DNA of 64,000 nucleotides, taken from positions 62,001 through 126,000 of the IMG/VR virus record IMGVR_UViG_3300032294_002797; one strand, written 5' to 3'. Every line of letters starts with the position of its first letter. Within the stretch, counting starts at the first letter, position 1. Below the pieces are notes generated by a model. It saw only the letters and a program-made list of their open reading frames with translations. It did not search any database and was not told where the DNA came from. A program made the position numbers and the translations under genes. Shown one piece after another: positions 13,495 through 42,608 of this stretch.

Positions 13495-16400
13495 ATGGCT
13501 AGAGGATTTAATCTTACAGCAGAAATCAATCTCAGAGGTCCGTCTAATATTAGGCAAATAACGTCTAATATTCGTAGACAGCTAGGTAATATCAATGCTA
13601 ATATCAATTTAAATATAGATAGAAATGCATCTAGAACAATTACTCAAGTCAATAATAATCTAAGAGTATTAACACAAACTTTAGGAGCTACGACAACAGC
13701 TGCGACAAATGCTACTACAGCATTTAATAATTTGGCGGCTGCGATGAGAGCGGTTGGAAATGTGAATTTGCCCGCAACCATCAGTACTCCTTTGGTTAGA
13801 ACAGCCGGCGCCGCCAATAACGCCAGCAGAGCCATTGCGCAAGCCAGAACAGAATTTGAGGATTTCGGTCGTCAAGCAGGACTAGCCGTACGACGTTTTG
13901 CTGCGTTCGCTTCTGTAACATCTGTTATTTACGGCGTTACAAACGCTCTGGCCAAAGGTGTTCAACAGTATATAGAATTTGATAGACAAATCGTTAGATT
14001 GTCACAAGTTACTAATGAAAGCAGAGAATCATTATCTGCTATGGTACAAGAGATAACAAAATTAGCTACAAATTTTGGCGTCTCATCATCGGATATTTCT
14101 CAGGTTGCTGTAACATTGGCGCAAGCTGGTTTAACAGCTAAAGATACGAGAATCGCGCTAGAAGCATTAGCTAAAAGTGCTTTGGCCCCATCTTTTGATA
14201 GCTTATCAGATACTGTAGAAGGCAGTATCGCGCTTATGAGACAGTTCGGCATTAGCGCTGGACAGCTAGAAAATGCTTTAGGTAGTGTAAATTCTGTTGC
14301 TGCGGCTTTTGCCGTAGAAGCCGGAGATATTATTACTGCTATACAAAGAACTGGTGGTGTATTTGCTGCTGCTAGTAAAGGTGTCAGTGAAGGCACAGAT
14401 GCGTTAAATGAATTTATTGCAGTATTTACTAGTGTTCGTGCGACTACTCGCGAAAGTGCTGAAACTATCGCCACTGGATTAAGAACTATTTTTACTCGTA
14501 TTCAAAGAGGAGATACAGTAGAAGCCTTAAAAGAATTCGGAGTTACTCTCACAGACTTAGAAGGTAAATTCGTTGGGCCCTACGAAGCTGTGCGCAGACT
14601 CAGCGAAGGATTAAGTAGACTAGATCCCAGAGATTTAAAATTTAGTAGCATAGTAGAAGAACTTGGTGGATTCAGACAAATCGGTAAAGTGCTTCCGTTA
14701 ATCCAACAGTTTTCCACCGCTCAAGAAGCTCTGAAAATTGCACAACAAGGTCAAGGCTCTCTTGCGATAGATGCGGCTAAAGGTCAGATGGCACTGGCGG
14801 TTCAAATACAAAAAGTAAGAGAAGAATTTAGTGCTTTAGTTAGATCTCTAGGAGATAGTAAGGGTTTTCAAACTTTAGTGAGACTTGGTTTGGATTTAGC
14901 CAGCGCACTAATTAAAGTAGCTGATGCAACTAAAGGTGTTTTGCCATTAATAGCTATTATGGGTGCTTTTAGAGGAGCTAGTGCCCTCACTCAATTTGCT
15001 GGTGGTTTTGGTGGAGGTTTTAGGGGTAATCGTCAACGAGCCAGAGACGGAGGTGTTATAGGTTTTGCTAGAGGAGGATTGGTTCCCGGCTCAGGAGATT
15101 CTGATAGCGTCAATGCTAGATTAACTCCTGGTGAGTTTGTAATGAGAAAGAGTGCGGTTAGAAGTATCGGTGCTGACAATTTAAGCAGCATGAATCGTGG
15201 AGGAGGTATAAAAAAATTACGAGAAGGAGGATATACTGTTAGAGAGCTTGCTGATAGTCAGAGAACTATCATAAATAACTATTTATATCCACGTAACAAA
15301 AACTCTAACTTAGAATTAAATGATAAAGTTAATGCTCAAATTATTAGAGTTAAAGAGAAACCGCTCACTGATGCAGAGATACGTGAGATCAAAGGTGCAT
15401 ATCCTACGTTAACTGGAAAATTAAAGACAAAAATAAAAGATCCTAAGAATAGAAAATTATTAGTAGAATCTCAGCGACCAACCTATCAAGGACCTGAATC
15501 AGATTCTATAGATGGTCTAGAGTATTCTCGTGCAGAAAAAGCCTGGGCTACTAAGTATGAGGAAATAATCAGGAAAAGACATAATCTTGAAGCAGCTAAT
15601 AAAGACAATCCCAATTATCCTGTAGACACCGTATCATCTCGTAACGTATGGGGGGAAGTAAAATTTAAAACTACCAAAGAACCAAAACGAGCTTTAATAG
15701 CTAAATTGTTGGCTAAAAAATTATTAGATAGATCAGTTAATAGGTTTTTTAAAGAAAATTCTTCGGACCAAGTTGACGGATCCATAGAAACAGACCCGCT
15801 TGGTCGTAATACTGTCAATCTAGGCAATCTTGAATACTATGGAGGAGATACAGGTCCTGGATTAGAATCTCATAAAAAGCAATTTTATAGGAAATTAAGA
15901 TCTGGAGGTATTGTTCAAAAATTTAAAGAAGGGGGTGAAACCCTTACTCTTGAAAAAGCAAGAGGCATGAGTAGAAAAGATATCCTAGATATTTTATCTG
16001 GCAGAAAAGGTGGCATAAGTACAACAGAAAGAGAAGTTGGAGTTAGTTCAGGTGAGATATACACAATACTAGGACAAAGAAATCCAGATGCAAAAACACA
16101 AGGACTTAAAGAAGCTATTCTTCAAAAAGCTGTTACAGCAAACAATAGGCAATTAGGAGCAGCAAAAGCTCAGATAACTAAATTACAGAATAATAATCTA
16201 GAAGTTGCCGCAGCAGGCTTATTTGGATCGAAATTTGCCGATCAAAATATGGATATCGAATCTCCGTCACTTTCTCAGTCCGCAAAGGTTAGAGTTATTA
16301 GCGGAATAATGGATAGTAAAATAGCTTCTTCTTTTAGCTCTATTGTATCAGAAACAACAGATAAATTAACCACGAGATTAGCAGAGGTAGCCACAACAGG

Positions 16401-19400
16401 CGATATACTAGCAAAACTTGGGCTAGGTAAAGAACTTAATACGGATTTTGACCGAACACTAGTTACTGGAGCCGACAAGATATTATCCGATCCAGGCAAA
16501 CCAGTGTTTTCGGAGTTTAGTGACCCAAATAAAGTATCTGCAGCATTACAGGGAGCAGAATTAACTTATCTTGGATCATCTTTAGTAGAGTTGATAAAAC
16601 AAAGAAAAGATTTATTACAATATATACGAGTGGTGACGGCTAGACCAGAATCGACTTTGGGTCTTATACAAGGATTTTTAGCCAGTAAAGATCTACCCAT
16701 ACCACGATCTCAATTTAAAGGCTTTGGTGGCGAAAATATTAGTGCAGATGAAATTGCCGAATTAAAGGCTGCATTTTTGAATCCAGATTCATTATTTGTT
16801 GATGATGATCCGCGTAATATAGCAGCAGCCAAAAAACGATCTAATGAAGGTATCACTAGTTATTTATACGGAACTGGCAAAAGTTTACCAAATTCGCAAG
16901 CACAGGGAGATATAGAGGGGTTATTACTAGAACAGGTTGTACAAAAACTTGGTGGTCCCGGAGCCCTCAAAGGCATGGGATTTGATTTTCCCAATGGGTT
17001 AGGCGATGCTGCTAAATATTTTGGACTACCTGATGATATACCCACAGATGTTAAGAGAACTATTAGTGGGCCATCCACAATCAAAGATAATATCGTTACA
17101 TATTTAAAGAACGTTATGGGCTATGCTGGTGGTGGGACTGTACCTGCTATGGTTAGTAATGGTGAAGCTTATGTTCCTCCAGCTATGGCTAAAAAAATTG
17201 GTTATGGGAAACTCCATAAAATGAATCAGGCTGATCGAAATGGGATGAATAGTTTTGCGAGTGGAGGGATGAGCATATTTAAAGGATCGGGCACTGGAAC
17301 CAGTGATAGTATTGGTCCTATAGGATTGCCTGTTGGCAGCTTTATCTTAAGAGAAAAAGCCACGAAGGCTTTGGGGTTGAATAGCGGAGGCAGGGTACAG
17401 AAATTCTTATTCGGAGGCAGAAGCAGAGGGCCAGCAGCAAGACCCGATGCTATTTCTGTAGATACAATAGGAGCGAGTAATACTGCTGTCAGATCTCTAG
17501 GAGACCTAGCTACAGTACTTAATGATTTAGGAGTTGCATCCTCTAGATCCTCTCAATTATTGAGTCGTGGATATCAGGCCACGGCAGCAGAAGCACAAAG
17601 AGCATATGAGGCCGATCTAGTTATGGCTCGCGCAGCCGGTGCTAGTGCAGATGTATTATACGATCTAGAACAAGCTTTAATTAGAACCAGACAAGAAGCA
17701 GAAGCAGAAGTAGCAGTAATGCAATCTTTAGCAAACATGAGTGGAGTAGAATTGCAAGATACTCTAAGCGACATGGAAGATGAATTAAGAAGATTGACGG
17801 ACGCCGCTAGGAATGCCGCGGCCGCTGCTGGACTAACCGGAGAGGAACTAGAAACAGAAGTTAGAGCAGGAGCTGGAGATCGTCGAAGACAAGCTTTCGA
17901 AACTGTTGCGGCCTCTGGAACTGGTCCACTTCGTGCCCTTGGTGGAGGAACTGGTTTAGATTTAGCTGCTATTGGCGCTACTGGAGATGATCTGGGTAGG
18001 GTTATTAATAATTTGATGAGAGACGCAGAAACTCTAGAACAGATGAATATGCGATATACTCAAAATCGCAGAGAAGAAGTAGCACAAGCCGCTATGGCTG
18101 CCGGTAATATAGCTAGAGCAGCTAGAATACGAGCTGGTAGTGAAAGAGATGTAGAAGAGACTATACAGAGAGAAATAAGAGCTAGAACAACAGCAGTAGA
18201 ACAAAATGCTAGAAGTACTGGAGCTAGGGGTCCAGATGAAGCTAGAGAATTTAATAGGCAAAATAATATGCTAGCTTCTTTTGCCGTTATGACCGTTGGG
18301 AATATTATTGCTGATACTATCAATGCTAAATCTAGCGCCACGGAAGCTGGTGTTGCTGGAGGTATCAGAGGAGGAACTCAGGCTTTTGCATATGCAAATC
18401 AGATTAGTGGAGAATTAACTAATTTTGCAGATGGTCTTAGTCGTACGGGGAATAGATTTGCTGGCCTAGCCAGTAATATTGCTAGATTTGCTGGAAGAGT
18501 TCAAATTTTTGCTGTGCTAGGAGAAGCAGCTATACAAGCATATAATGGGATTAGACAATTTGGTATAGAATTAGAAAAAAATAGAGTTGAGCAAGCTCTT
18601 AGTGGCCTTACCGAACAATTTGATAAGTTAAATAAAGATCTGAATCAGTTAGATCTTAGAAATGCTATTCAGTCAAATATTATAGATGCTAGCAGATCTT
18701 CGGAAAGACTAAGATCACAAACATTAGATACGGCCTCCGCTGGATGGATCAATGGTATAGATGTTTTCATATCATCTCTACAAAATAGTGAAACCAATAA
18801 TACCAATAGGAGGGCTGCTTTAAGATCACAAGTATTGGAAAAAGAAGGTATTATGGAATATATCAACACTAGTTTTGGAGGTGCTGATACTTATGCTGCC
18901 AAAGCAGCAAAATATAGTGGACAGCAAGCTCTAGAATCTAGTCAATCCTTTAAGCCAGTAGCTGATAATATTAATCAATTAATTTCTGCCCGTATTAGAG
19001 GAGGAGAAAATATTGGAGATATTCTTGGCGGACCGGAATTTAAAGATTTTGCTACATCCTTAGTTTATGCTGATAGTGCTTTAAATAAGCATATTCGTGA
19101 GATAGAATTATCTACTAGATATACAGAAGAAGAGAAAAAAGCTCGTATAGATGAGATTATTAGTATACAAGGAGCTAATAAAATTCGTACGCAGGCCGCA
19201 ATTGCCCAGAGAGAAAAAGATCAAAGAGAATTAGGCACAGTAGCTTCTGTATATACAAGATCATTAAAGAGAATGTTTACTAATATGGAACAGGCTATAA
19301 ATGCTGCTGCATATTCATTAAAACAAATGACGGACAATATAGATTTAAATGTTAGCGCCCTACAAGGACAAGCCAAAGTAGGTTCAGTTGATTTACAAAC

Positions 19401-22400
19401 ATCTAATATTATACAAAATCCACGAGCCTATAATCCCGGAGTAAGATCATCTGCTCAGGCATCTGCCTCTTCGTTATTTGGTACAAGAGCACCAGAAATG
19501 GCGCAGCTTATGAATCTTGGAGAAACAGTAGAAAATACTGTTATGTCTACTATCAATAAAACATTAGAAGACAAAGGTCCAGATGCCTCTAATGAAGCTA
19601 TAGCCAGAGCTGTAGATAAAAGCGTACGAGACGAACTCAGTGGATTAGGATTACCTCCGGAGCTAGCGGATAAATTAGCTAAAGAAGTTGGTGATACATT
19701 AGTAGATTTAAGAAAATCTGGCGACGAAAAAGTTGATTTTGCCAAGCTTTCCGAAAAACTAGGATCGTTGTCTAGCGTTATAGATACAGCAAAAGATGCA
19801 CAGCAAGCAGCTATCAAAGCTTTAGAGAATTATCAGAATGTTTTGAATGCTTATGCTAATAATATTAATCGTATTATTGACCTGGAAACCAGTGCTAGAG
19901 ATAAATTTAATAAATCTGTCAATATCGCTGCTGATGGTAGTACCGCTTTATCTAAAGCTCTTGGCAGAACCATCACTGTCGCAGATGCTTTTGCTAAAAG
20001 AGATGCTTCTATTGCTAGACAAACAGGTGGTCTAACTGATCCAACGGATATCTTTAATAAGATCTTAAGTCTGAATAATAATAGAGATATTTTACAATCA
20101 TCTAGTAGAGAAGCGGCTGATAAAGGTCCTGCTGGTATTCAAGATTTTATCAAATTTAATAGCGAACTTAAGAATACTAATATTGCTTTAAGAGAAAATA
20201 GAGCTGCTTTAGAGGATATGGCTACTAATACAGAAAAAGCAAGCTCAGCTATGGATGCTATACAAGAAGCTCAACAAAAAGCAGCTGGTAGAATTGGCTT
20301 CTTAGAAAAAGTAGTTACCAGTACTCCTGATGAATTAGATTCGTTAAATCAATCTTTGTATAGACTGCAAAGAAATATGAATGGTCAACAAAATACTATT
20401 CAGAATAGCATAGGTGCTCAAAAGGCATATAGGGATGCATTAAATCAGGGAGCTTCTGCTGCTGAAGCTATGAGAGCTGCTCAAACAGCTTTTGCCAACG
20501 AAAGAAAGGAAACCCTAGGTACTCTTCAAGATATTATGCCATTTTTAGGAGACAATCAACAAGCAAATAATATTAAAGCAAATGTTCTAGAGACAATGTT
20601 AGCCGAGTCCGGCATGGGAGTTTCTCCGCTATTCCAACAGATACTCAATACTCTACGAAATCCCGAACAAGATCCCGCCACAGCTGCTGCTATACAATAT
20701 TATAATCAGTCAATAGCGGAACAGTCAACAGCTACTAGATTATTAGGACAATTAGATCAACAACTAGCCAATGATATAGCAGTACAAAATAGTAAACTAA
20801 TAGTAGACGGCTTAACTAAAACAGTATTAACTTTCCAGAATAATGAGCTTAGAGATATAGCAGACAAAGTCAATACAATGGTTTCTATTATGCAGAAAGC
20901 TCCTGGCGCTGGAGGTTTAGCTAGCGGAGGCATGGTTTATGCTGCTGGTGGTCAATTTATCAATTTTCAACCAAAAGGTACAGATACTGTTCCTGCAATG
21001 CTAACACCGGGAGAGTTTGTTGTCAATAGAGCCGCTACTCAAGCGAATCTTCCGTTATTAAAATCTATTAATAATGGATATTCCAGAGGAGGTAAAGTAT
21101 CTTATTATGCTGCTGGTGGTTTTGTTACCAATTGGGGCAGTCAAACTAGTATGGATGAATTTGGCATGATGAGTGATAAAGAGATTATTGATCCTAGTGT
21201 AGAAGCTAATAGAGCCATTTGGAGTGCTGGATACAAGCAGAATATTAGATTATTACCTAGTTATTATACTTTAGATTTTTCTGATGATAATACTACGATC
21301 CCATCACCGGGAGCAGACCCCGATAGTCCTAACTTTAACTTAGATCAAATTAAACCAACAAGTGGTAAAGTTAGAGTTGGCTCAGCAGTTGGTATTTCCA
21401 GGGTTGGAGATGATCAGTATGCATATATAGACAACCAAGGTGCTATCGACGCTAGTAGCGATATGCCTATTATCAAGGCTGCTGAGACAAATTTATATTT
21501 GGGTTTAGACAAGTTCAAATCAACAAATTTTGCTCAGTCCAAGGCTACAGAATACAAAGATCGATTTCGATCATTTGAAGCATTAGACTCTACTCTTCAT
21601 AAATCTATAAGTATGGATCCTATTGCTTTTGCTGATGATCTTCCAAAATTAAGTGATTTTACTTCTAATGCTAATGAATGGAATCCTACACTAGCTGGTA
21701 AATCATACGGTATAGCGTTTGATACTTCTACAGAGATTAGACCAACTGATAAAGATGTGTCTGCTGCGCCTTCTTTTAAAATTTGGTACTATAAAAGATC
21801 CCCATTGAATTATGCGGGCTGGGCTCCAGGACTAGCGATGGGAGTTTCTGTAAAGCAGCCAAATTTCGATATTGGCACTCCATATTCCTCAAATGATGGA
21901 TTCGATAGCAAAAGCTGGGTCGTTTTCGGATCTGGTAAGTATAAATCCGCTATGTATCCTGACTTAGAAAAAATGAATGGTGTTATTACCGGCAAAGGAA
22001 TAAAAGACGCTAATACTATTAGTTCAGAGAACTATGAGCTATATAAAAATACAGTAGATTTTTTAAGTGGAGCTTCCACATATAAGGATACCGGCGGCCT
22101 TGGTGCAGCTTTACAACAAAAATTATCTAGTTTATATAATGGTCTAGCACAATTTATAACTCTTGATCAAAATGAAATAGCCCCCTTAGATGAGCTAGTC
22201 AAATTGAATGCTACTAGCGCAATTATTGCACAACAATCTTTAGAGCAACAATTTAAAGATGGCCTTCAGTTTATAGATACTAATGCTGCTAAATATAATA
22301 AAGTAAAAATAGGATTGACTGGTGCCAAACCCGCCATCAAAAATCCAGATTTCTTAGCCTCTAAGCCTTTTGATATAGAAAATACAGCAACAAAAATATC

Positions 22401-25400
22401 CAAGTCTTTTCCGTTCATGATAAATGGAAATATGCGTGAGATTCTAGGTAAAGATTTTGAGGATGTCGCTGCTCAACAAGCTGCTGCTACTAAAGGCAAA
22501 GTACATAGCAGATTACTACCGGTTGACGAATTAAAGGTCAATTTACCAGTGAATATACAGGGTAAACAACCTCAATTATCTATACCAATAGCTTATGAAG
22601 AATATACCGGAGAACTATTTGATCCATCAACTAAGAATTTTGATGGTAAGCCTTTTACCACTTTGTTGCCTAATAATATTTCAGAAACTCTTTTTCAAAA
22701 TTTGGACGAATCACGAAAAAGATTATTTACAACTAAAAAATATACAGTACCAGATATTTTAAAAGCATCGAAACTAGATGATCCTACTAATCCGATTTTT
22801 ACTGATATAATAGACTTATTCAAGTTTCAAACTAATAATGATCCTAATGTAGATGCACAGGCTAAAAAAGTAGCAGCAAATCTTAATTTAGTATTCGATC
22901 ATCCTCAAAATTCTTTAATTAAAAATGTAGGCTTAGCTGGAGACGGCGGGGTAGATGTGTTCTCTGCTATGAGCGATGAGCCCACCACAGTTAATGTAGG
23001 AGAATTTTTACTCAAAAAATTCCAAGAGTTTAGAGGCCAGCTAGCTTCTGGAGCAAATAAAGTAGATCCAATTATGCCGAAAGGCGCTGTATTTTCTGAT
23101 GCTGAACTTCCTCAAGCAACTGCCGCACTGATTCGTGGATCGATGGCATTATTTGGGGGCCTAAAATTACCGGGTGCTCCTTATGGATGGCTTTCTAAAT
23201 CTGGTGGTCCTCAAGCTCTCAGAGCTGCTATATCAGGTAACCCCGTAGCAGCAGCGCAGCATATGGCAGGAGTATTAAATCAAGCAGGAGCTTATGTCTC
23301 GCAATTACAAAATAGGGCTCCTAATGTATCAGCTTATAATGCTCTAGATAATGCTATGACTATGATTAGTGGAGCAGCTAATGCTTTTGGTTCCTTAGCT
23401 GGTGGGGATACTAGTCTGTTAAAGCAGTTTTATGAGAATAAGGTGCCTATCGCCGCAGTATTTCGTAGTTTAGGAGCTGCGTCTAGATTTGGTAAAATAT
23501 CGGGTATGAAATTGAGTCCGGATTGGCAAAATATATTAGGTAATCAGCTTCAGGGATCCAAATTGAAAACTGTTGGACGAGATGGTTCATTATCAGACGC
23601 CACGTTAGTTAGTGCGATACCAGAAAACGCCACTGTTTCTGATTTAGTCAAAGTAATTTTTAATCCATATAATGAATTTGCTGGTAAAGATATACGAAAA
23701 GGTCTTATTCAAAAATTTGGTGATGATATATTCAATCTGAGAGGACCAAATCGCATGCCGTATTTTGATCCTCAAACCTTATCTTTTATTAGAACGGGAC
23801 TTTATCGTTTGATGGATTGGTATGGAGGAAAAGGAAATTGGGTAGGACAAGACTATTTCTTTGATGAGAAAAACGAACCAGATAATGCTCTTCGTATGGC
23901 TAATTTTGCTCAATCTTTAAAAACAGATGGGTCTCAATTCTATAAAGACGCTATGGAAGCCCATACTCTATTTGGTTTGTCTAATGCTTTTGGAGCTTTA
24001 CCAACAGATCAATGGTTTATGTCTCGTGGCGCTGTATTGCCACAAAAGAAGGCGGCTGGCGGAGTTATCTATGCTCAAACGGGTGGAAACTTAGTCAACT
24101 TTAAACCCCAGGGCACTGATACAGTTCCCGCGATGTTAACCCCAGGAGAATTTGTTGTTAATAGACGAGCAACACAAAAAAATCTACCACTACTACGATC
24201 CTTGAATAGTGGTGGATCTACAGGATATAGTCAAGGAGGGGTGGTTTATTTAAGCGGCGGAAGTGCCGACCCTGTTGTAGACGTTACCGGCAATGGTGTT
24301 GGAAACATATCGCCAAAAGTTATTCAACAAGCATTGATTACAGGGATTAGAAATGACCAATTATTAGCCGGTAATGCATCTAGAGAAGATACTTTGGACA
24401 TGACGGTGAGAGATTATACTAGACGAACGGTTTTCAAGGACCATCTTTTAAATCTTGGTGTTACTCCAGAACAGCTTAAAATAGCAGAAGATGATCTACG
24501 AGAAAGATCGGAAACCGGCGTAGACTTACCGGCAGGTGATATGTATGATAGACAAATTGCGGGTACTTTAATTAGACAAGGAATATCACAAGATATTATT
24601 GATAAAGCTAAAAAAGCTAATTATGAAGCACAAAATAAGACATTTCGTATACAAAAAGATTTGTTTGATAAGAAAAAAATGGCATTAGCAAGATCTAATG
24701 TTTTTGGTGTTGAATATTTTATGGGAAACTTAAGCATTTTTGATGCATCTCGTGGGGCACGTAAAGATAAAAAACTATTAGAAGAGCGTTTTAAATTAAC
24801 AGATATGACCAAAGATAATACTGTTAATGTACTAGATTTATTAACATGGTTATCTAGAAATCCAGATGTTCAATCGGCTGCTAATCCATATATCAGCTCA
24901 TCCGATGCCTGGATGCCCAAAGGCTTTTTATCTGGTAGTGGCGGTGTATTTTCTGATACTACTCGTAAACAAGACGAAAGAGCCGAAATAGAACCGCATA
25001 TTCGTACTCTCTCTCCTCAACTTGATACATGGGCGAATGTTCTCAGGTATAGACTAGATTCTGCCCGACAAGCCCAAGATCTAAGAGATGCAGAAGCTAA
25101 ATTAGCACAAAATCAAACAAAGGAAAAACAAGGGGTTGAAGCTTGGGGTAGCGGTGGAGCCGGAGGGATAGATCCATCTGAAATTAATACGCTAAGAGCC
25201 AAACAAAAAGAATGGGGACAGAAAAGATTACAGTATATGGAAAGACTAAATACTTTAGAAGGTCTTATTTCTTTAAGAGCTATCGGCGGTACAGGAGTGG
25301 GGTCTTTGGAGGAACTTGTCGCCAATGAACAAGGTATGTCTACAAGTATTAGAGATAATGAACAATTAGGTTTGAGAGAAGATATTATAGATGAAGGCAA

Positions 25401-28400
25401 TAGAGAAGGTTTGCGTAAAGGAGCGAGAAATTTAGTCATGACAGCAGCAATAGGCGCTGCTTCACCATTTTTATTGCCCGCTGGAATAGCAGCTGCTGGA
25501 GGAGCAGCGGTATTAACTATCGGAGGTTCGCTTGGAGCAATGTATTTGGCTGATGCTGTTGAAGAAAAGAATTATCAAAATCTAAAAAATACCGATCCTA
25601 AAGAATTTGCTCGTCAACAGTTATTAAGAAGTCAAAATTCGTATCAGGAAGCTGCTGCTTCTATGGAAAATATTGTAGACATTGCTGATATGGCTTTGGG
25701 TATTGGCGCCGGCGCTGTAAACACAAAGGGATTATTTAAATATAGATTTTTTCAAGAAGCTGCAGACGGTCAGCCTGTCAAGATAAAAAATACTGCTGTT
25801 AGTCGTTCAGCAGAAGCTAAGGACATAGCAGATAAAAGTAAAGCAGCTCTCAAAGACATGTCCGATGATGCAAAAGCTAAACCAAAAACAGCTGATGATG
25901 TTAAAACTGATACTGAAGCTAAAGCAAAAACGAAAACCGAGCAACCGGCAACACCAGAAAAACCCATTAAATTTAAGAGTCCAAAAGTAGCAGAAGCCTG
26001 GAATAATGCCGTAGCCGAAGCTAGAGCCAAATATAATAAGTCTATAAATGAATTTTCAGACCAACAGATGAAAGATTATTTTGAGACCGGACCAGGCTCA
26101 GCTGCTAAACAACAAGTTAATGCTCAAATAGAACAATTGAAACTTGATGCTGGTGCGACAAAGATGAACGATGCTGATGCTTGGAATACCATAGCAACAC
26201 AGTATCCCGATAGATTTGGACAATTTGCAGATGATCTGAAGAAAAATGGATATATGATAGATGATGATGGAAATATTATATTTGGTCCTAATGCTAGAGG
26301 TATTGTAGATTCTGATCCCAATATGGCCGGGGCTTTTGAAAATGCTCGTACAAAAGCTAGACAACAGGGTATAGACGAGGCCGCTGATAAATTAAAAATT
26401 AAAAAAGGTAGTAAAGATTATGATGATTTAGTAAAAGCATATGATGATGATATTAGTATTAAAGGAAGAACATGGAGAGGATATGTCAAAGATAAATGGG
26501 CTGCTGTCACTAAGTCCAAATGGGCAAGATTAGCAGCGGGTGGTGCCGCATTACTGGCTGCATGGCAGGCTTGGATGATGCTTAATGCAAATAAACAAAA
26601 TCAAAAACCCCCAGGAGGTGCTCCAACAATTCCACCAGCTCCTGGTACTGGAGGTTCTGGTGGTGGTGGCGGCGGCGGTAGCGGTGGAGGTAACACACCA
26701 ACTGTTCCCCCTCTGGAGCCCACTGTTGTCGATCCTGCTGGTAAAACTGTTAAAAAGATAGAAACTCCTAATTATTATGATGAATTAACATATAAAGAAT
26801 ATGTAAGTAGACAACTAGTGGCCGGTCATGCTCCACCAGAGCCGATCAAAAAGTTATTTACTACGGCCGCTGTTTATGGCTATCAGACAGATGCTACAGG
26901 CAAGAGAATTAGAGGTAGTAATAGAAGAACCACAGCATATGATCAAAGAGATACTAGTGGCTTAAATAAAGGTATTGGTTTAGAAGGAGATGAAACCGGC
27001 GGCGCTATGCGCGCTAAAAGTCCTGTTGGAGGCAGAACTGTTTCGTCTCAAACCCACACTACTACCGCTCCATTTGTCCCTAGTTCTACAACATATGATG
27101 GAAAGGGCGGGTTTAATTATAAGCCAGGCGGTGCTCCTCAAGATACTAGAAATTTATCAGAAGAAGATAAAGCTAGAATAAAAAAACAAGGAGGATTCTT
27201 ACCATCCGGCCAGTTCGGTACTGACCAAAATAATAAAGAAGGTAATGCGGGTATACGTCAATCTGCGGGGGCCGCACCAGCAATACCATTTGGTGTTCGA
27301 CCCGTGCCTCCAGAAAAAAAACAGGGAGCCGCAGATGAATTTGTAGAGTCTGCAAGTAGTACAGACGTTGCTAAACAAATGGAAATAGCAAATCGACCAA
27401 TGAGTGTTCGCGGAAAAACAGTTATGTGGGGTAGAACAAGCCCTCTTACTCAATATAAAACAGCTTATGCATTCTGGAGACGTAAACTAGGAGAATATAA
27501 TTATTTTAATAGTATAGCTTATCAAAAGAAAGATAGATGGAAAAAAGGATTTGGTAAATATGATAGTGTCTTAAAACAAGAAAAAGAAGCACAAGGATTG
27601 TCTAGGGGTGGTGTGGTATATGCTCAAAATGGCATGCTTATTCCTTATCAACCTAGGGGTACTGATACTGTTCCGGCTATGTTAACGCCGGGTGAATTTG
27701 TGGTTAATAGAGCCGCCACACAAAAACACTTGCCTTTATTAAAAACTCTCAACCGTAGCAAAGGCGGAACTGTTTCATATTTATCAGCCGGAGGACAATC
27801 TGCTCCCGCGGCTCCTCCTTTGTTTGTATCAGACAAGAATGCTGCAAAACTCAGTAATGTTGGTAAAGATGTAAAAAATGTAGAGATTCTTGGCAAGGAT
27901 ATCAAATCATTATTAATTAATAATCCTGTTCCTAAAAAATTAGATGAATCAACAGGTAAAATTTTAGATTGTTGTAAAGATAGTCAAAATAAAAACCAAA
28001 AAAATGCAGAAAATATTTTAACGCTACAACTACAAAATAGAACTAATATGGGTATTAGTACAAAACTCATTATGGGCGCCATAGAATATACTGGAATGAA
28101 AGCCGAGGCCGCGATAGCCAAAGCTTCAGTTGAAAAACCAGCTTGGGTAGACGAGGAAGTTAATAGCATACAATCAAAAATAATTGTAATGATTAGTCAG
28201 AGCATAGACTCGGCGAAACAATCAGTAACCGACACCATTGGGGCGGCCAAAGATGCTCTTGCGGGTATGCTCGGAGGCGCCGCTGCACCTGCTGGTGCTG
28301 TTCCTGGTCCCGCTGCGGCCGGTGCCGCCGCTGCTCCTGCGGCGGGAGCCGCTGGTTTGTACAACGGAGGTATGGTATATGCTAGTAATGGAACTCTTAT

Positions 28401-29670
28401 AAATTATCAACCAAGAGGCACAGATACCGTACCAGCAATGTTGACTCCTGGAGAATTTGTAGTTAATGCTAGAGCAACAAAAAAACATTTACCTCTATTG
28501 AGTGCTATTAATGATGGAAATTATAAAGCTGATGGTGGTATTATCACACCGAGTTATTATGCGAACGGGGGTCACAACCCAGATCATAAGCAATGGGCTG
28601 AAGCGAGACAAAGACACGAAGAACGTCAAGAACAAACTCAAATATTAAGCGGATATAAAAAATTTGGAAATAGAGCGCCATTATTTTTTGAAATAGATAA
28701 TCAGATAAAGCAAGCTCGTAATCTGTTTGATGCACTTGATGCAAACGCTATTAACGAAGATCTAACTAAAGATCAAGTTATAACTATGGTTGAAGATAAA
28801 ATAGCAAAAGCATCGTCCGATCAAAAGGCTGCTCTCATAAATGCAGAAAGAGCAACGGCTCAACAACGCTTTCAGTATTTATTAGGTGTCGTTCAAAGAT
28901 CTTCTGTAGCTATACAATCTCTAACAGGTAATGCTAGAAATTATGAGTCGGTACAAAATCCTGGATTTACTTACTATGATATTCTAGATGCTCAAATAAA
29001 GCATGGCCAGGCAGAAGGAAAAGCGCTATACGAAGGATGGTTAGAATTAAATAAAGAAGTGGGCTCAGTATCTTTACCGGGCTCAACAGCGGTAGGTTTA
29101 CCAGCACCAGGAGCAGGAGGAGCGAATCCGCCTGTTGGTAAACAGTACGGAGGATTAATTTATGCTAATAATGGCATGTTAATTCCTTATCAGCCCAAAG
29201 GAACTGATACTGTGCCTGCTATGCTCACTCCTGGTGAATTTGTAGTTAATAGAAATGCTACCAGGAATAATCTTGCTTTATTACAAGATATTAATAGTAA
29301 TAGATTTAATAATGGTGGTCCTGTAGTATATAAGCAAGCGGGCGGTCCTATTATGTATAGGCAATATGGCGGAATGACGGATGAATCTGGCGGAGGCACT
29401 AGTGGTGTATCTAATAGTGGCGGACCTGATTTTGATAAATTAGCCCAATTTACCGCCACCTTTGATAGATTTATTGGCCAATTACAAAAACTTAATATTC
29501 CACCACAAATTAATTTAACTCTAACACAACAGAAGCCATTGGAGATTAATGTTAACGGAGCAGAAGCACTACAAAAACTATTGGAAGGTCCATTAGGAGA
29601 TATTGTAAGAGGAAATGTCAATACAGCACTTAATCAAAATCGCGTAGGTAACGAAGAACCACCACAATAA
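13495..29670 (+). CDS. Giant modular tail tape-measure protein (5391 aa) with repeat-bounded cargo domains
   Basis: N-terminal TMP core (FDRQIVRLSQVT..ATNFGVSSSDISQVAVTLAQAG..); long Ala-rich helices; canonical position; eight copies of a GTDTVPAMLTPGEFVVN-type module; embedded HAD and PD-(D/E)xK-like motifs. Confidence 0.9.
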   Translation: MARGFNLTAEINLRGPSNIRQITSNIRRQLGNINANINLNIDRNASRTITQVNNNLRVLTQTLGATTTAATNATTAFNNLAAAMRAVGNVNLPATISTPLVRTAGAANNASRAIAQARTEFEDFGRQAGLAVRRFAAFASVTSVIYGVTNALAKGVQQYIEFDRQIVRLSQVTNESRESLSAMVQEITKLATNFGVSSSDISQVAVTLAQAGLTAKDTRIALEALAKSALAPSFDSLSDTVEGSIALMRQFGISAGQLENALGSVNSVAAAFAVEAGDIITAIQRTGGVFAAASKGVSEGTDALNEFIAVFTSVRATTRESAETIATGLRTIFTRIQRGDTVEALKEFGVTLTDLEGKFVGPYEAVRRLSEGLSRLDPRDLKFSSIVEELGGFRQIGKVLPLIQQFSTAQEALKIAQQGQGSLAIDAAKGQMALAVQIQKVREEFSALVRSLGDSKGFQTLVRLGLDLASALIKVADATKGVLPLIAIMGAFRGASALTQFAGGFGGGFRGNRQRARDGGVIGFARGGLVPGSGDSDSVNARLTPGEFVMRKSAVRSIGADNLSSMNRGGGIKKLREGGYTVRELADSQRTIINNYLYPRNKNSNLELNDKVNAQIIRVKEKPLTDAEIREIKGAYPTLTGKLKTKIKDPKNRKLLVESQRPTYQGPESDSIDGLEYSRAEKAWATKYEEIIRKRHNLEAANKDNPNYPVDTVSSRNVWGEVKFKTTKEPKRALIAKLLAKKLLDRSVNRFFKENSSDQVDGSIETDPLGRNTVNLGNLEYYGGDTGPGLESHKKQFYRKLRSGGIVQKFKEGGETLTLEKARGMSRKDILDILSGRKGGISTTEREVGVSSGEIYTILGQRNPDAKTQGLKEAILQKAVTANNRQLGAAKAQITKLQNNNLEVAAAGLFGSKFADQNMDIESPSLSQSAKVRVISGIMDSKIASSFSSIVSETTDKLTTRLAEVATTGDILAKLGLGKELNTDFDRTLVTGADKILSDPGKPVFSEFSDPNKVSAALQGAELTYLGSSLVELIKQRKDLLQYIRVVTARPESTLGLIQGFLASKDLPIPRSQFKGFGGENISADEIAELKAAFLNPDSLFVDDDPRNIAAAKKRSNEGITSYLYGTGKSLPNSQAQGDIEGLLLEQVVQKLGGPGALKGMGFDFPNGLGDAAKYFGLPDDIPTDVKRTISGPSTIKDNIVTYLKNVMGYAGGGTVPAMVSNGEAYVPPAMAKKIGYGKLHKMNQADRNGMNSFASGGMSIFKGSGTGTSDSIGPIGLPVGSFILREKATKALGLNSGGRVQKFLFGGRSRGPAARPDAISVDTIGASNTAVRSLGDLATVLNDLGVASSRSSQLLSRGYQATAAEAQRAYEADLVMARAAGASADVLYDLEQALIRTRQEAEAEVAVMQSLANMSGVELQDTLSDMEDELRRLTDAARNAAAAAGLTGEELETEVRAGAGDRRRQAFETVAASGTGPLRALGGGTGLDLAAIGATGDDLGRVINNLMRDAETLEQMNMRYTQNRREEVAQAAMAAGNIARAARIRAGSERDVEETIQREIRARTTAVEQNARSTGARGPDEAREFNRQNNMLASFAVMTVGNIIADTINAKSSATEAGVAGGIRGGTQAFAYANQISGELTNFADGLSRTGNRFAGLASNIARFAGRVQIFAVLGEAAIQAYNGIRQFGIELEKNRVEQALSGLTEQFDKLNKDLNQLDLRNAIQSNIIDASRSSERLRSQTLDTASAGWINGIDVFISSLQNSETNNTNRRAALRSQVLEKEGIMEYINTSFGGADTYAAKAAKYSGQQALESSQSFKPVADNINQLISARIRGGENIGDILGGPEFKDFATSLVYADSALNKHIREIELSTRYTEEEKKARIDEIISIQGANKIRTQAAIAQREKDQRELGTVASVYTRSLKRMFTNMEQAINAAAYSLKQMTDNIDLNVSALQGQAKVGSVDLQTSNIIQNPRAYNPGVRSSAQASASSLFGTRAPEMAQLMNLGETVENTVMSTINKTLEDKGPDASNEAIARAVDKSVRDELSGLGLPPELADKLAKEVGDTLVDLRKSGDEKVDFAKLSEKLGSLSSVIDTAKDAQQAAIKALENYQNVLNAYANNINRIIDLETSARDKFNKSVNIAADGSTALSKALGRTITVADAFAKRDASIARQTGGLTDPTDIFNKILSLNNNRDILQSSSREAADKGPAGIQDFIKFNSELKNTNIALRENRAALEDMATNTEKASSAMDAIQEAQQKAAGRIGFLEKVVTSTPDELDSLNQSLYRLQRNMNGQQNTIQNSIGAQKAYRDALNQGASAAEAMRAAQTAFANERKETLGTLQDIMPFLGDNQQANNIKANVLETMLAESGMGVSPLFQQILNTLRNPEQDPATAAAIQYYNQSIAEQSTATRLLGQLDQQLANDIAVQNSKLIVDGLTKTVLTFQNNELRDIADKVNTMVSIMQKAPGAGGLASGGMVYAAGGQFINFQPKGTDTVPAMLTPGEFVVNRAATQANLPLLKSINNGYSRGGKVSYYAAGGFVTNWGSQTSMDEFGMMSDKEIIDPSVEANRAIWSAGYKQNIRLLPSYYTLDFSDDNTTIPSPGADPDSPNFNLDQIKPTSGKVRVGSAVGISRVGDDQYAYIDNQGAIDASSDMPIIKAAETNLYLGLDKFKSTNFAQSKATEYKDRFRSFEALDSTLHKSISMDPIAFADDLPKLSDFTSNANEWNPTLAGKSYGIAFDTSTEIRPTDKDVSAAPSFKIWYYKRSPLNYAGWAPGLAMGVSVKQPNFDIGTPYSSNDGFDSKSWVVFGSGKYKSAMYPDLEKMNGVITGKGIKDANTISSENYELYKNTVDFLSGASTYKDTGGLGAALQQKLSSLYNGLAQFITLDQNEIAPLDELVKLNATSAIIAQQSLEQQFKDGLQFIDTNAAKYNKVKIGLTGAKPAIKNPDFLASKPFDIENTATKISKSFPFMINGNMREILGKDFEDVAAQQAAATKGKVHSRLLPVDELKVNLPVNIQGKQPQLSIPIAYEEYTGELFDPSTKNFDGKPFTTLLPNNISETLFQNLDESRKRLFTTKKYTVPDILKASKLDDPTNPIFTDIIDLFKFQTNNDPNVDAQAKKVAANLNLVFDHPQNSLIKNVGLAGDGGVDVFSAMSDEPTTVNVGEFLLKKFQEFRGQLASGANKVDPIMPKGAVFSDAELPQATAALIRGSMALFGGLKLPGAPYGWLSKSGGPQALRAAISGNPVAAAQHMAGVLNQAGAYVSQLQNRAPNVSAYNALDNAMTMISGAANAFGSLAGGDTSLLKQFYENKVPIAAVFRSLGAASRFGKISGMKLSPDWQNILGNQLQGSKLKTVGRDGSLSDATLVSAIPENATVSDLVKVIFNPYNEFAGKDIRKGLIQKFGDDIFNLRGPNRMPYFDPQTLSFIRTGLYRLMDWYGGKGNWVGQDYFFDEKNEPDNALRMANFAQSLKTDGSQFYKDAMEAHTLFGLSNAFGALPTDQWFMSRGAVLPQKKAAGGVIYAQTGGNLVNFKPQGTDTVPAMLTPGEFVVNRRATQKNLPLLRSLNSGGSTGYSQGGVVYLSGGSADPVVDVTGNGVGNISPKVIQQALITGIRNDQLLAGNASREDTLDMTVRDYTRRTVFKDHLLNLGVTPEQLKIAEDDLRERSETGVDLPAGDMYDRQIAGTLIRQGISQDIIDKAKKANYEAQNKTFRIQKDLFDKKKMALARSNVFGVEYFMGNLSIFDASRGARKDKKLLEERFKLTDMTKDNTVNVLDLLTWLSRNPDVQSAANPYISSSDAWMPKGFLSGSGGVFSDTTRKQDERAEIEPHIRTLSPQLDTWANVLRYRLDSARQAQDLRDAEAKLAQNQTKEKQGVEAWGSGGAGGIDPSEINTLRAKQKEWGQKRLQYMERLNTLEGLISLRAIGGTGVGSLEELVANEQGMSTSIRDNEQLGLREDIIDEGNREGLRKGARNLVMTAAIGAASPFLLPAGIAAAGGAAVLTIGGSLGAMYLADAVEEKNYQNLKNTDPKEFARQQLLRSQNSYQEAAASMENIVDIADMALGIGAGAVNTKGLFKYRFFQEAADGQPVKIKNTAVSRSAEAKDIADKSKAALKDMSDDAKAKPKTADDVKTDTEAKAKTKTEQPATPEKPIKFKSPKVAEAWNNAVAEARAKYNKSINEFSDQQMKDYFETGPGSAAKQQVNAQIEQLKLDAGATKMNDADAWNTIATQYPDRFGQFADDLKKNGYMIDDDGNIIFGPNARGIVDSDPNMAGAFENARTKARQQGIDEAADKLKIKKGSKDYDDLVKAYDDDISIKGRTWRGYVKDKWAAVTKSKWARLAAGGAALLAAWQAWMMLNANKQNQKPPGGAPTIPPAPGTGGSGGGGGGGSGGGNTPTVPPLEPTVVDPAGKTVKKIETPNYYDELTYKEYVSRQLVAGHAPPEPIKKLFTTAAVYGYQTDATGKRIRGSNRRTTAYDQRDTSGLNKGIGLEGDETGGAMRAKSPVGGRTVSSQTHTTTAPFVPSSTTYDGKGGFNYKPGGAPQDTRNLSEEDKARIKKQGGFLPSGQFGTDQNNKEGNAGIRQSAGAAPAIPFGVRPVPPEKKQGAADEFVESASSTDVAKQMEIANRPMSVRGKTVMWGRTSPLTQYKTAYAFWRRKLGEYNYFNSIAYQKKDRWKKGFGKYDSVLKQEKEAQGLSRGGVVYAQNGMLIPYQPRGTDTVPAMLTPGEFVVNRAATQKHLPLLKTLNRSKGGTVSYLSAGGQSAPAAPPLFVSDKNAAKLSNVGKDVKNVEILGKDIKSLLINNPVPKKLDESTGKILDCCKDSQNKNQKNAENILTLQLQNRTNMGISTKLIMGAIEYTGMKAEAAIAKASVEKPAWVDEEVNSIQSKIIVMISQSIDSAKQSVTDTIGAAKDALAGMLGGAAAPAGAVPGPAAAGAAAAPAAGAAGLYNGGMVYASNGTLINYQPRGTDTVPAMLTPGEFVVNARATKKHLPLLSAINDGNYKADGGIITPSYYANGGHNPDHKQWAEARQRHEERQEQTQILSGYKKFGNRAPLFFEIDNQIKQARNLFDALDANAINEDLTKDQVITMVEDKIAKASSDQKAALINAERATAQQRFQYLLGVVQRSSVAIQSLTGNARNYESVQNPGFTYYDILDAQIKHGQAEGKALYEGWLELNKEVGSVSLPGSTAVGLPAPGAGGANPPVGKQYGGLIYANNGMLIPYQPKGTDTVPAMLTPGEFVVNRNATRNNLALLQDINSNRFNNGGPVVYKQAGGPIMYRQYGGMTDESGGGTSGVSNSGGPDFDKLAQFTATFDRFIGQLQKLNIPPQINLTLTQQKPLEINVNGAEALQKLLEGPLGDIVRGNVNTALNQNRVGNEEPPQ
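15088..29250 (+). repeat. Dispersed in-frame module repeats in the TMP
   Basis: Exact GTDTVPAMLTPGEFVVN at 20977, 24112, 27658, 28417 and 29200; degenerate copies at ~15088, ~17137 and ~17281. Confidence 0.95.
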
Positions 29671-29682
29671 AGAAAGTTAAAA

Positions 29683-35739: not shown

Positions 35740-35740
35740 T

Positions 35741-42594: not shown

Positions 42595-42608
42595 TATAGG
42601 AAATAAAT

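What the first reader, a model, noticed from the sequence alone, without database searches (positions are those of the whole stretch)
20977..29250. 17-aa TMP motif is invariant in five copies while synonymous codons differ
The first four codons (G-T-D-T) read ggt-aca-gat-act, ggc-act-gat-aca, ggt-act-gat-act, ggc-aca-gat-acc and gga-act-gat-act. The amino acids are identical while third positions are scrambled. This indicates strong selection on the peptide rather than recent duplication or gene conversion, as expected for a protease site, autoprocessing fold or partner-binding interface.
Basis: partly seen in the sequence, partly recalled or inferred. Interest (0 to 1): 0.75.

Follow-up and report, generated by a model that had tools for sequence, protein, structure and literature searches.

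The report
Conserved repeated module in giant tape-measure protein
A freshwater jumbo phage encodes a 5,391-residue tail tape-measure protein that carries eight old copies of a roughly 70-residue module, five of them with an identical 17-residue core kept by strong selection; the same module occurs once in phage lambda gpH, next to its still-unmapped cleavage site.

Summary
GTDTVPAMLTPGEFVVN occurs exactly five times at the stated coordinates, with the stated codons, inside one 5,391-aa ORF (13495-29670). That ORF is a tail tape-measure protein (PF10145 and TIGR01760, both above cut-off).

Synonymous sites among the five cores are fully saturated: 9.7 differences per 51 nt against 9.4±0.8 for random codon choice, with no amino-acid change. 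Against an ortholog, cores 4 and 5 show 13 synonymous and 0 non-synonymous changes. Copies group by position across relatives only 36-53% identical, so the duplications are ancient and not homogenised.

The 17-mer is the centre of a roughly 70-aa module with Gly-rich flanks and a following helix. The module has no Pfam model but matches 16,568 protein clusters, including giants up to 7,872 aa with up to 13 matched stretches. It also matches lambda gpH 727-792, mycobacteriophage Douge TMP and Nodularia cyanophage TMP.

AlphaFold monomer models leave the core unstructured. I read it as a hairpin-plus-helix docking or oligomerisation element. A maturation-cleavage signal, as in lambda gpH to gpH*, is the main rival. 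Function is inferred, not shown.

The parts
13495..29670 (+). Tail tape-measure protein gene, 5,391 aa (579 kDa)
   Evidence: Single ORF. PF10145 E 2.9e-23 and TIGR01760 98.6 bits against a cut-off of 28.8. Many TMP PHROGs match aa 25-520.
14050..14631 (+). PhageMin_Tail (PF10145) core, aa 186-379
   Evidence: It is the most conserved stretch across orthologs, 0.96-0.97 in 30-aa windows.
15046..15240 (+). Degenerate module D1, aa 518-582 (…GDSDSVNARLTPGEFVMRKSAV…), preceded by a hydrophobic/Gly-rich segment at aa 471-515
   Evidence: HMM 66 bits; BLAST to canonical copies; hydropathy. In 150 relatives the first module starts at a median of aa 520.
17125..17433 (+). Tandem pair of degenerate modules D2 (aa 1211-1247) and D3 (aa 1253-1313), offset 42 aa
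   Evidence: The same pair with a 40-51 aa offset recurs in many relatives. Each forms its own positional clade.
20917..21135 (+). Module 1 (aa 2475-2547); invariant core at 20977-21027
24049..24276 (+). Module 2 (aa 3519-3594); invariant core at 24112-24162
25432..25560 (+). Double hydrophobic segment, aa 3980-4022, possibly membrane-inserting, inside the least conserved spacer
   Evidence: Kyte-Doolittle peaks of 1.73 and 1.46. Conservation is about 0.12 across aa 3601-4700.
27598..27804 (+). Module 3 (aa 4702-4770); invariant core at 27658-27708
   Evidence: In the AF2 model only the helix at aa 4739-4754 forms.
28357..28593 (+). Module 4 (aa 4955-5033); invariant core at 28417-28467; preceded by an Ala/Gly/Pro linker (82% G+A+P+S)
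28585..29061 (+). Helical spacer between modules 4 and 5 (aa 5031-5189)
   Evidence: AF2 gives long helices at pLDDT 80-94. dN/dS is 0.31.
29140..29364 (+). Module 5 (aa 5216-5290); invariant core at 29200-29250
   Evidence: It falls in the clade of last modules, support 0.986.
29365..29667 (+). C-terminal tail (aa 5291-5391), conserved strand-plus-helix end; by position the part that docks in the tail-tip hub
   Evidence: Conserved block in A3. In relatives the last module ends a median of 145 aa before the C-terminus. The docking role is by analogy with lambda gpH 818-849, JBD30 and Douge (PMC12617516, PMC11445458, PMC13033339).

Best explanation
The 17-mer is the core of a roughly 70-residue module found widely in tail tape-measure proteins. 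The module reads: Gly-rich linker, GG-h-h-Y strand, the core (which by its sequence looks like a beta-hairpin around a Pro-Gly turn), an amphipathic helix (RxATQxxLPLLxxIN), and a second GG-h-V-x-Y strand.

This 5,391-aa tape measure of a 223-kb freshwater phage carries eight copies: five canonical and three degenerate. They are separated by unrelated spacers; the one spacer modelled is helical. The copies arose by ancient duplications and are held by strong purifying selection. All of this is shown.

The proposed mechanism is inferred. The module does not fold alone. In the assembled tail the three or six parallel tape-measure chains would bring same-position modules together. There they would form a compact hairpin-plus-helix knot that keeps the very long chains in register and docks them in the lumen of tube-fold rings (tube, distal tail protein, hub). 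The last copy, about 100 aa from the C-terminus, would position the C-terminal plug in the tail tip, as proposed for the JBD30 'hook'. Ordinary-length tape measures need one such module; a roughly 0.8-µm one keeps about one per 700-1,200 residues.
For: TMP identity.

Module anatomy and copy number.

Selection and age of the copies.

Conservation rank: the modules are the main conservation peaks outside PF10145 across nine orthologs, at 0.79-0.88 against a mean of 0.35.

Family-wide architecture in 150 relatives: the first module starts at about aa 520, the last ends about 145 aa before the C-terminus, and gaps of about 1,045 and 1,220 aa recur. Module number rises with length, r=0.72 (the set is biased toward many-module proteins).

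Breadth: 16,568 clusters at E<=1e-3. The exact 17-mer occurs 280 times in 131 of 149 giants.

Homologous copies in characterised TMPs: Douge gp16, two copies, E 2e-11; lambda gpH 727-792, E 0.002 by hmmsearch and 82% probability by hhalign; JBD30 gp46 1015-1067, weak, E 0.027. Nodularia phage 2AV2 TMP has SDTVPAMLTPGEFVVN.

No autonomous fold: AF2 monomer models give the core pLDDT below 55, the following helix about 81, and the spacer helices 80-94.

Partner argument (inference): the core is nearly identical between phages whose neighbouring tail genes have no detectable similarity. This favours self-association or a fold-level partner over a fast-evolving specific partner.
Against: No structure of the module exists. 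The Douge, lambda and JBD30 entries resolve only the last 30-40 residues of the TMP (PMC13033339, PMC12617516, PMC11445458). I could not run multimer predictions, so the oligomeric knot and the lumen docking are untested. Self-association alone does not require identical cores at different positions. The JBD30 match is weak (E 0.027 with A1, 0.41 with A2). The T5 anchor segment cited as precedent (pb2 1085-1127) is not sequence-related to the module. The rise of module number with length comes from a list ranked by summed score.
Confidence: 0.42

Rival explanations
1. The module marks maturation-cleavage sites. After tail assembly the tape measure would be cut in the flexible Gly/Ala-rich linker just upstream of each module, by a phage or host protease or with the module's help. 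The giant protein would then end up as about eight pieces in the tube, easier to expel.
For: [quoted passage not shown] From the sequence, those masses put the cut at about residue 710-730. That lies 0-25 residues upstream of the module match, which starts at 727 with GEFVF at 754. T5 pb2 is cut after R1127, three residues before a GGMMY element (PMC10038345). Several of our modules are preceded by G/A/P/S-rich linkers, 82% and 53% before copies 4 and 5.
Against: No nucleophile or other catalytic residue is conserved in distant copies. The residues just before the first GG are not conserved among our copies. The T5 similarity is not significant: hhalign probability 0.4%, and no HMM hit even without filters. 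Cleavage has been shown only for lambda and T5. The linkers before copies 1-3 are not G/A/P/S-rich (0.20-0.35).
Confidence: 0.25
2. The modules are repeated binding sites for the tail assembly chaperone, which coats the tape measure during assembly.
For: Chaperones act along the whole tape measure, so repeated sites on a very long one would make sense (general knowledge of lambda gpG/gpGT; not tested here). The core is unstructured alone, as expected for a motif that folds on a partner.
Against: Chaperones diverge fast. The two ORFs upstream of this TMP match no family, yet the core is almost unchanged from Nodularia phage to this phage. Normal-length TMPs have a single copy near the C-terminus, not sites along the length. 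I found no paper that maps a chaperone site to this region.
Confidence: 0.12
3. The module acts after ejection, in the host envelope: cell-wall binding or lysis, or building the trans-envelope channel.
For: T5 pb2C, which starts at a module-like stretch, carries the short 'metallopeptidase motif' linked to muralytic activity (PMC10038345). Lambda gpH* forms the periplasmic channel (PMC12617516). A hydrophobic segment precedes the first module here and in lambda.
Against: The T5 His/Glu positions read Arg/Asp in our copies, and the similarity is not significant. Hosts range from E. coli to mycobacteria and cyanobacteria, so a common envelope target is unlikely. No peptidase or lysin family matches the protein.
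Confidence: 0.08
4. The identity is not due to selection on this peptide. It would instead reflect recent duplication, gene conversion, an assembly artefact, or a constraint on DNA, RNA or an antisense gene.
For: The wobble-aligned antisense frame also reads a conserved peptide (LLTTNSPGV[NS]IAGTVSVP) in all five copies. One ortholog's core 5 shares a 17-nt run with core 4.
Against: Synonymous sites are at random-draw level. Positional clades are well supported. An identical independent contig and an 89% ortholog exist. The minus-strand ORFs over the cores are in different frames and are absent at copies 1 and 2. A 17-nt shared run is within chance.
Confidence: 0.01

Closest known systems
Phage lambda tape measure gpH, residues about 727-792 (N-terminal part of the cleaved fragment gpHC)
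   Same: The module order is the same: hydrophobic/Gly-rich stretch, GG element..PA....GEFV.., helix (KEATSRIGVGNLYRLM), GYATGGYV, then the C-terminal helix that docks on gpI. Profile matches give E 0.002 and hhalign 82% probability.
   Different: Lambda has a single copy and keeps only about a third of the core residues. Its family models (PF06791, PF09718, TIGR01541) do not match our protein. The region is unresolved in all lambda structures (PMC10721106, PMC12617516).
Pseudomonas phage JBD30 gp46, predicted 'hook' at residues 1022-1066
   Same: The module profile aligns to 1015-1067 (…SDSIPILASNDEFMTRAAVV…). Like our last copy, it sits about 90 aa from the C-terminus. The authors predicted two helices plus a beta-hairpin (PMC11445458).
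   Different: The match is weak (E 0.027 and 0.41). There is a single copy. The hook role and the cleavage at residue 1066 are the authors' speculation.
Mycobacteriophage Douge gp16 (1,699 aa)
   Same: It has two internal copies, at 964-1037 and 1412-1465, E 2e-11. So multi-copy and internal placement also occur in a cultured phage.
   Different: The cores are divergent (SDSMLARVSNGEFITRA). Only residues 1658-1699 are resolved (PMC13033339).
Nodularia cyanophage vB_NpeS-2AV2 tape measure (3,404 aa)
   Same: It has a nearly identical core, SDTVPAMLTPGEFVVN, plus a second copy 73 aa further on. It is the closest cultured carrier I found.
   Different: There are only two strong copies, a third of the way along the protein, and none near the C-terminus. 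There is no overall similarity to our TMP.
Phage T5 pb2 (cleaved after R1127; pb2C with a 'metallopeptidase motif')
   Same: The layout is comparable: hydrophobic stretch, cleavage, GGMMY…GTEVV…ATPND, then the C-terminal coiled coil in the hub (PMC10038345).
   Different: The sequence similarity is not significant. I treat it as an analogy only.
Thermus phage P23-45 gp96, the 5,002-residue 'giant' tape measure
   Same: Both are giant tape measures of siphophages with extremely long tails (PMC10770324).
   Different: It gave no module match in the phage collection search. Its N-terminus is an RNA polymerase, whereas ours has a PF10145 domain.

Membership tests
Phage tail tape-measure protein, TP901/PhageMin_Tail type | PF10145 / TIGR01760 core domain above the curated cut-off | tested here: met
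   PF10145 scores 83.2 bits against a cut-off of 33.2. TIGR01760 scores 98.6 against 28.8. Eleven TMP PHROGs match aa 23-520.
Phage tail tape-measure protein, TP901/PhageMin_Tail type | Largely helical, extended body | tested here: inconclusive
   Only aa 4940-5391 were modelled. The spacer 5031-5189 is confidently helical. The rest was not predicted.
Phage tail tape-measure protein, TP901/PhageMin_Tail type | Gene sits between tail chaperone/tube genes and tail-tip genes | tested here: inconclusive
   The neighbours on the same strand have no Pfam or PHROG match. Fibre-like and virion proteins lie upstream. Very large ORFs lie downstream.
Phage tail tape-measure protein, TP901/PhageMin_Tail type | Protein length sets tail length | not testable with these tools
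   There is no isolate and no micrograph. 5,391 aa at 0.15 nm per residue would give about 0.8 µm.
Lambda-family tape measure (TIGR01541 / PF09718 / PF06791) | Match to the lambda-family models | tested here: not met
   These models hit lambda gpH but not our protein. Only the short module is shared.
Self-cleaving tail-protein domains (e.g. Peptidase_S74 intramolecular chaperone) | Recognisable autoprocessing domain with a conserved nucleophile | tested here: not met
   No such Pfam match. No Ser/Thr/Cys is conserved across distant copies. The core has no confident fold.
T5 pb2-type metallopeptidase motif | The His and Glu of the short T5 motif …EHGTEVVT… (zinc-ligand role as I recall it; the ligands are not named in the paper I read) | tested here: not met
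   Placing the T5 stretch by eye against our copies, the equivalent residues read R/K/Q-G-T-D-T-V-P. Profile comparison is not significant.
Cleaved tape measures (lambda gpH, T5 pb2) | Proteolytic cut next to the module in mature virions | not testable with these tools
   This needs virion proteomics. In lambda the reported masses place the cut at about 710-730, just upstream of the module (PMC12617516).

The most novel reading that the evidence does not exclude
The module is a self-contained processing unit. Once the tube has closed around the tape measure, each assembled module promotes cleavage of the linker upstream of it. Giant tape measures would then be polyproteins cut inside the tail into TMP-sized pieces. 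The same element would explain the unmapped, protease-less gpH to gpH* cleavage of lambda.
Probability: 0.12. Interest if true: 0.85.

Novelty: new variant of a known kind. Interest (0 to 1): 0.55.

Why it matters
Outside the PF10145 N-terminal domain, tape-measure proteins have little sequence that is conserved between distant phages. This roughly 70-residue module is conserved from lambda to mycobacteriophages, cyanophages and uncultured jumbo phages. It has no Pfam model and is absent as a peptide string from the searchable literature. In every solved tail it sits in the unresolved stretch between the tape measure's body and its hub-bound tip.

In lambda it lies directly beside the cleavage that makes gpH*, whose site and protease are still unknown after 50 years. 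The module therefore gives a concrete target for mutagenesis in a tractable phage.

The multi-copy giants bear on a separate question. They reach 7,872 aa, which implies tails longer than 1 µm if the usual 0.15 nm per residue holds, and they suggest how very long tails may be kept in register.

Tried and rejected
**Recent duplication or gene conversion.** Rejected by the random-codon simulation and the shared-run test and by the positional clades.

**Selection to avoid DNA identity between repeats.** There is no signal: divergence equals random expectation rather than exceeding it.

**Antisense gene.** The wobble-aligned antisense peptide is conserved as a by-product. The minus-strand ORFs are in different frames or absent.

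**Assembly artefact.** Rejected by the identical second contig and the 89% ortholog.

**Spacers as repeats too.** Only the modules repeat.

**Autonomous fold.** Two AlphaFold monomer runs gave no confident structure for the core. I therefore ran no fold search, because matches to a low-confidence model would be meaningless.

**Homology to T5 pb2.** Not significant.

**Existing family names.** Pfam, NCBIfam and PHROGs have nothing for the module beyond 'tape measure' PHROGs.

**ESM Atlas look-alikes.** Only unnamed viral clusters, plus one with PF09718 in 18% of members.

**Natural gene splits at modules.** The split TMP ORFs in L012 and L013 are in different frames, probably from frameshift errors, so they are not informative.

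**Population variants from public runs.** Relatives at 90-95% identity exist in several freshwater studies, but the variant table was truncated (40 of 928 shown), so no dN/dS could be taken from it.

**Papers.** Xu et al. 2014 on chaperone binding is not held. The literature search for chaperone-site mapping found nothing relevant.

Full report
**1. The observation.**
The window is bases 62,001-126,000 of a 223,302-bp IMG/VR virus record rated complete by CheckV. One ORF, 13495..29670 on the + strand, encodes 5,391 aa. The peptide GTDTVPAMLTPGEFVVN occurs exactly five times in it, at aa 2495, 3540, 4722, 4975 and 5236. In window coordinates these are 20977-21027, 24112-24162, 27658-27708, 28417-28467 and 29200-29250.

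Twelve of the 17 codons vary among copies, and always synonymously. A fully degenerate DNA pattern for the peptide finds these five sites and no others in the genome.

The gene is real. A second IMG/VR contig of 119.8 kb carries the identical 16,176 nt. A 5,357-aa ortholog at 89% identity has modules at the same positions. Relatives at 90-95% DNA identity occur in freshwater metagenomes from several studies.

**2. What the protein is.**
Residues 186-379 match PF10145 (PhageMin_Tail, E 2.9e-23, above the gathering score). Residues 145-491 match TIGR01760 (98.6 bits, cut-off 28.8). Eleven tape-measure PHROGs cover aa 23-520. It is therefore a tail tape-measure protein (TMP).

At 5,391 aa it is longer than the 5,002-residue TMP of Thermus phage P23-45, which the literature calls giant (PMC10770324). 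At 0.15 nm per residue it would span about 0.8 µm; this is an inference, not a measurement.

The flanking ORFs on the same strand match no family. Fibre-like virion proteins lie upstream, and ORFs of 1,488, 526, 526, 1,775 and 2,772 aa lie downstream.

**3. The motif is the core of a larger module, and there are eight copies.**
Self-comparison shows that only stretches of 65-85 aa around the cores repeat; the spacers are unrelated. The module reads: GG-h-h-Y-A, x2-3, G, x, h-h-(N/P)-(F/Y)-(Q/K)-P-(K/R/Q), the 17-mer, (R)xAT(Q/K)xxLPLLxxhN, x4-8, GG-x-V-x-Y..GG.

Several copies are preceded by flexible Gly/Ala/Pro-rich linkers. The first copy follows a hydrophobic, Gly-rich segment, as in lambda gpH.

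**4. Selection and age.**
- *Among the five paralogous cores.* Mean pS is 0.71 and no residue differs, while the eight codons before and the 16 after have pN of about 0.30. The mean pairwise difference is 9.7 nt per 51, which matches independent draws from the gene's codon usage (9.42±0.82). The longest shared run is 15 nt, within expectation (17.1±3.7). No DNA-level trace of common ancestry or conversion remains, and there is no extra avoidance of identity either.
- *Tree of module copies.* In a tree of 76 copies from nine giant relatives (36-53% identical overall), copies group by position rather than by protein. SH-like supports are 0.98 (D2), 0.998 (D3), 0.985 (the aa-2475 position), 0.94 (the aa-3519 position) and 0.986 (the last module). 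The duplications are therefore older than this family.
- *Ortholog fragment (L010).* Cores 4 and 5 carry 13 synonymous and 0 non-synonymous differences. dN/dS is 0.063 over the two modules and 0.35 outside them.
- *Full-length ortholog.* There are 0 differences in 85 core residues against 10.8% elsewhere (Fisher p = 1e-4).
- *Across the nine orthologs.* The modules are the main conservation peaks after the PF10145 core (0.79-0.88 against a mean of 0.35).

**5. Distribution.**
A profile of the eight copies finds 16,568 protein clusters at E<=1e-3 among 1.84 billion representatives, and 772 at E<=1e-30. The top 150 are 1,310-7,872 aa long with 3-13 matched stretches each.

In that set the first module starts at a median of aa 520 (ours 518). 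The last ends a median of 145 aa before the C-terminus (ours 101). A tandem pair about 42 aa apart, followed by gaps of about 1,220 and about 1,045 aa, recurs in many of the proteins. Module number rises with length (r = 0.72), but this list is ranked by summed score and so favours many-copy proteins.

The exact 17-mer occurs 280 times in 131 of the 149 giants. Over 791 instances G12 is 99% conserved, and P6, L9, E13, D3, A7 and V15 are 91-95% conserved.

Among cultured phages the module lies under annotated TMPs of Nodularia, Pseudanabaena, Rhizobium and EBPR siphophages. The 3,404-aa TMP of Nodularia phage 2AV2 reads SDTVPAMLTPGEFVVN.

Among proteins with solved structures it matches these:
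- Mycobacteriophage Douge gp16, twice, E 2e-11.
- Lambda gpH 727-792, E 0.002 by hmmsearch and 82% probability by hhalign.
- JBD30 gp46 1015-1067, weakly.

In all three entries only the last 30-40 residues of the TMP are modelled, so the module itself has never been seen (PMC13033339, PMC10721106, PMC12617516, PMC11445458). Pfam has no model for it; PF09718 ends at gpH 701. None of six peptide strings from the core occurs in the held literature.

**6. Structure.**
An AlphaFold2 monomer model of one module, built with 124 diverse copies as the alignment, has mean pLDDT 64. Only the helix after the core forms (aa 4739-4754, pLDDT about 81).

A model of aa 4940-5391, with 44 orthologous C-terminal regions as the alignment, gives confident long helices for the spacer 5031-5189 (pLDDT 80-94). 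It again leaves both cores below pLDDT 55.

So the core is not an autonomous fold. Its sequence (TVPAML, then a TPGE turn, then FVVN) suggests a beta-hairpin. This agrees with the hairpin-plus-helices 'hook' that the JBD30 authors obtained with a multimer prediction (PMC11445458). This step is inference.

**7. How it most likely works.**
*Shown.* The module is ancient, repeated and strongly constrained; it is unstructured alone; it separates helical spacers; and one copy always lies 100-150 aa from the hub-binding C-terminus.

*Inferred.* Tape-measure chains run in parallel in the tube, as three or six copies (PMC12617516, PMC10038345). Same-position modules therefore meet at one axial level. 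I propose that they assemble there into a compact hairpin/helix knot. The knot would keep the chains in register and dock them in the lumen of tube-fold rings. The last copy would place the C-terminal plug in the tip.

The near-identity of the core between phages whose other tail proteins are unrelated favours self-association, or a partner conserved at the fold level, over a specific fast-evolving partner. I give this model about 0.4.

*Main rival (about 0.25): a maturation-cleavage signal.* Lambda gpH is cut in its Gly-rich region into gpH* (about 78 kDa) and gpHC (about 14 kDa), with site and protease unknown (PMC12617516). Those masses put the cut at about residue 710-730, directly upstream of the module. 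T5 pb2 is cut three residues before a GGMMY element (PMC10038345), but the T5 similarity is not significant. No catalytic residue is conserved, which argues against autoproteolysis by a classical mechanism. The two models are not mutually exclusive.

*Less likely.* Chaperone binding and a post-ejection envelope function are weaker candidates, for the reasons given under the rival explanations.

**8. Comparison with what is known, and novelty.**
The protein is a member of the PF10145 tape-measure family (membership feature met). It is not a member of the lambda TMP families (tested, not met), although it shares this one module with gpH.

The module itself is present in well-studied proteins but is unnamed and uncharacterised. 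Dispersed multi-copy use in giant tape measures is not described in the papers I could search. I rate the finding a new variant of a known kind, with interest 0.55. It would not overturn anything. It does give a defined, testable element beside an old open question (how and where gpH is processed, and what the unresolved part of gpHC does), and it points to a large uncultured family of phages whose tape measures imply tails of about 1 µm.

**9. Caveats.**
- The word-seeded search favours exact cores.
- The top-150 list favours many-copy proteins.
- Tree supports are FastTree SH-like values on short sequences.
- dN/dS rests on one ortholog fragment with mosaic divergence.
- Monomer AlphaFold cannot test oligomeric states.
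- No experiment bears directly on this protein.

Noticed in passing
window 13495-29670; relatives P0121, P0122: At 5,391 aa this tape measure exceeds the 5,002-aa P23-45 protein described as giant. Metagenomic relatives reach 7,794 and 7,872 aa with 13 matched stretches each, which implies tails of about 0.8-1.2 µm if 0.15 nm per residue holds.
   Followed up: partly
window 29176-29715 versus L010: Divergence from a close strain is mosaic. The C-terminal tail and the start of the next gene (29356-29715) are 99-100% identical. The spacer is about 88-93% identical. The invariant core 5 is locally the most diverged stretch apart from an indel patch (84%, 10 of 17 codons, all synonymous). This suggests short-patch exchange at modules or a recombination boundary near the last module.
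   Followed up: partly
window 34159-35739 and 35672-37252: Two adjacent, slightly overlapping ORFs of exactly 526 aa each are diverged paralogs (25% identity, E 1e-19). They lie downstream of the TMP and have no family match.
   Followed up: partly
window 29683-34149; L012 14780-17536: The 1,488-aa protein right after the TMP has a weak beta-roll match (PF21300 LbR_Ice_bind, below cut-off). A 918-aa protein downstream of a module-bearing TMP in an unrelated 154-kb contig carries the same faint match, which hints at conserved synteny.
   Followed up: no
window 37267-50927: Two very large ORFs (1,775 and 2,772 aa) downstream of the tail genes have no Pfam or PHROG match.
   Followed up: no
window about 26640-26700: A Gly/Ser run (…GGSGGGGGGGSGGG…) inside the least conserved spacer attracts many unrelated metagenomic contigs, seen as a depth spike at 26660-26849. 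The four module bins show the same effect at 80% likeness.
   Followed up: no
window 20977-29250, minus strand: The antisense frame whose wobble positions coincide with the sense wobble positions also reads a conserved peptide (LLTTNSPGV[NS]IAGTVSVP). Synonymous scrambling alone therefore cannot tell which strand is under selection. Here the short, frame-inconsistent minus ORFs settle it in favour of the sense strand.
   Followed up: yes
L012 2531-11284; L013 3922-11755: In two long metagenomic contigs the tape-measure region is called as 4-6 ORFs in different frames. This is probably frameshift error in the assemblies, and such genes will be missed as giants.
   Followed up: partly
L007 14122-14541 (T5 pb2 C-terminus): The T5 stretch right after the R1127 cut (AEGGMMYPGVSYQMGEHGTEVVTPMVPMKATPND) resembles the first half of the module by eye, and it contains T5's 'metallopeptidase motif'. 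Statistically the match is not significant.
   Followed up: yes
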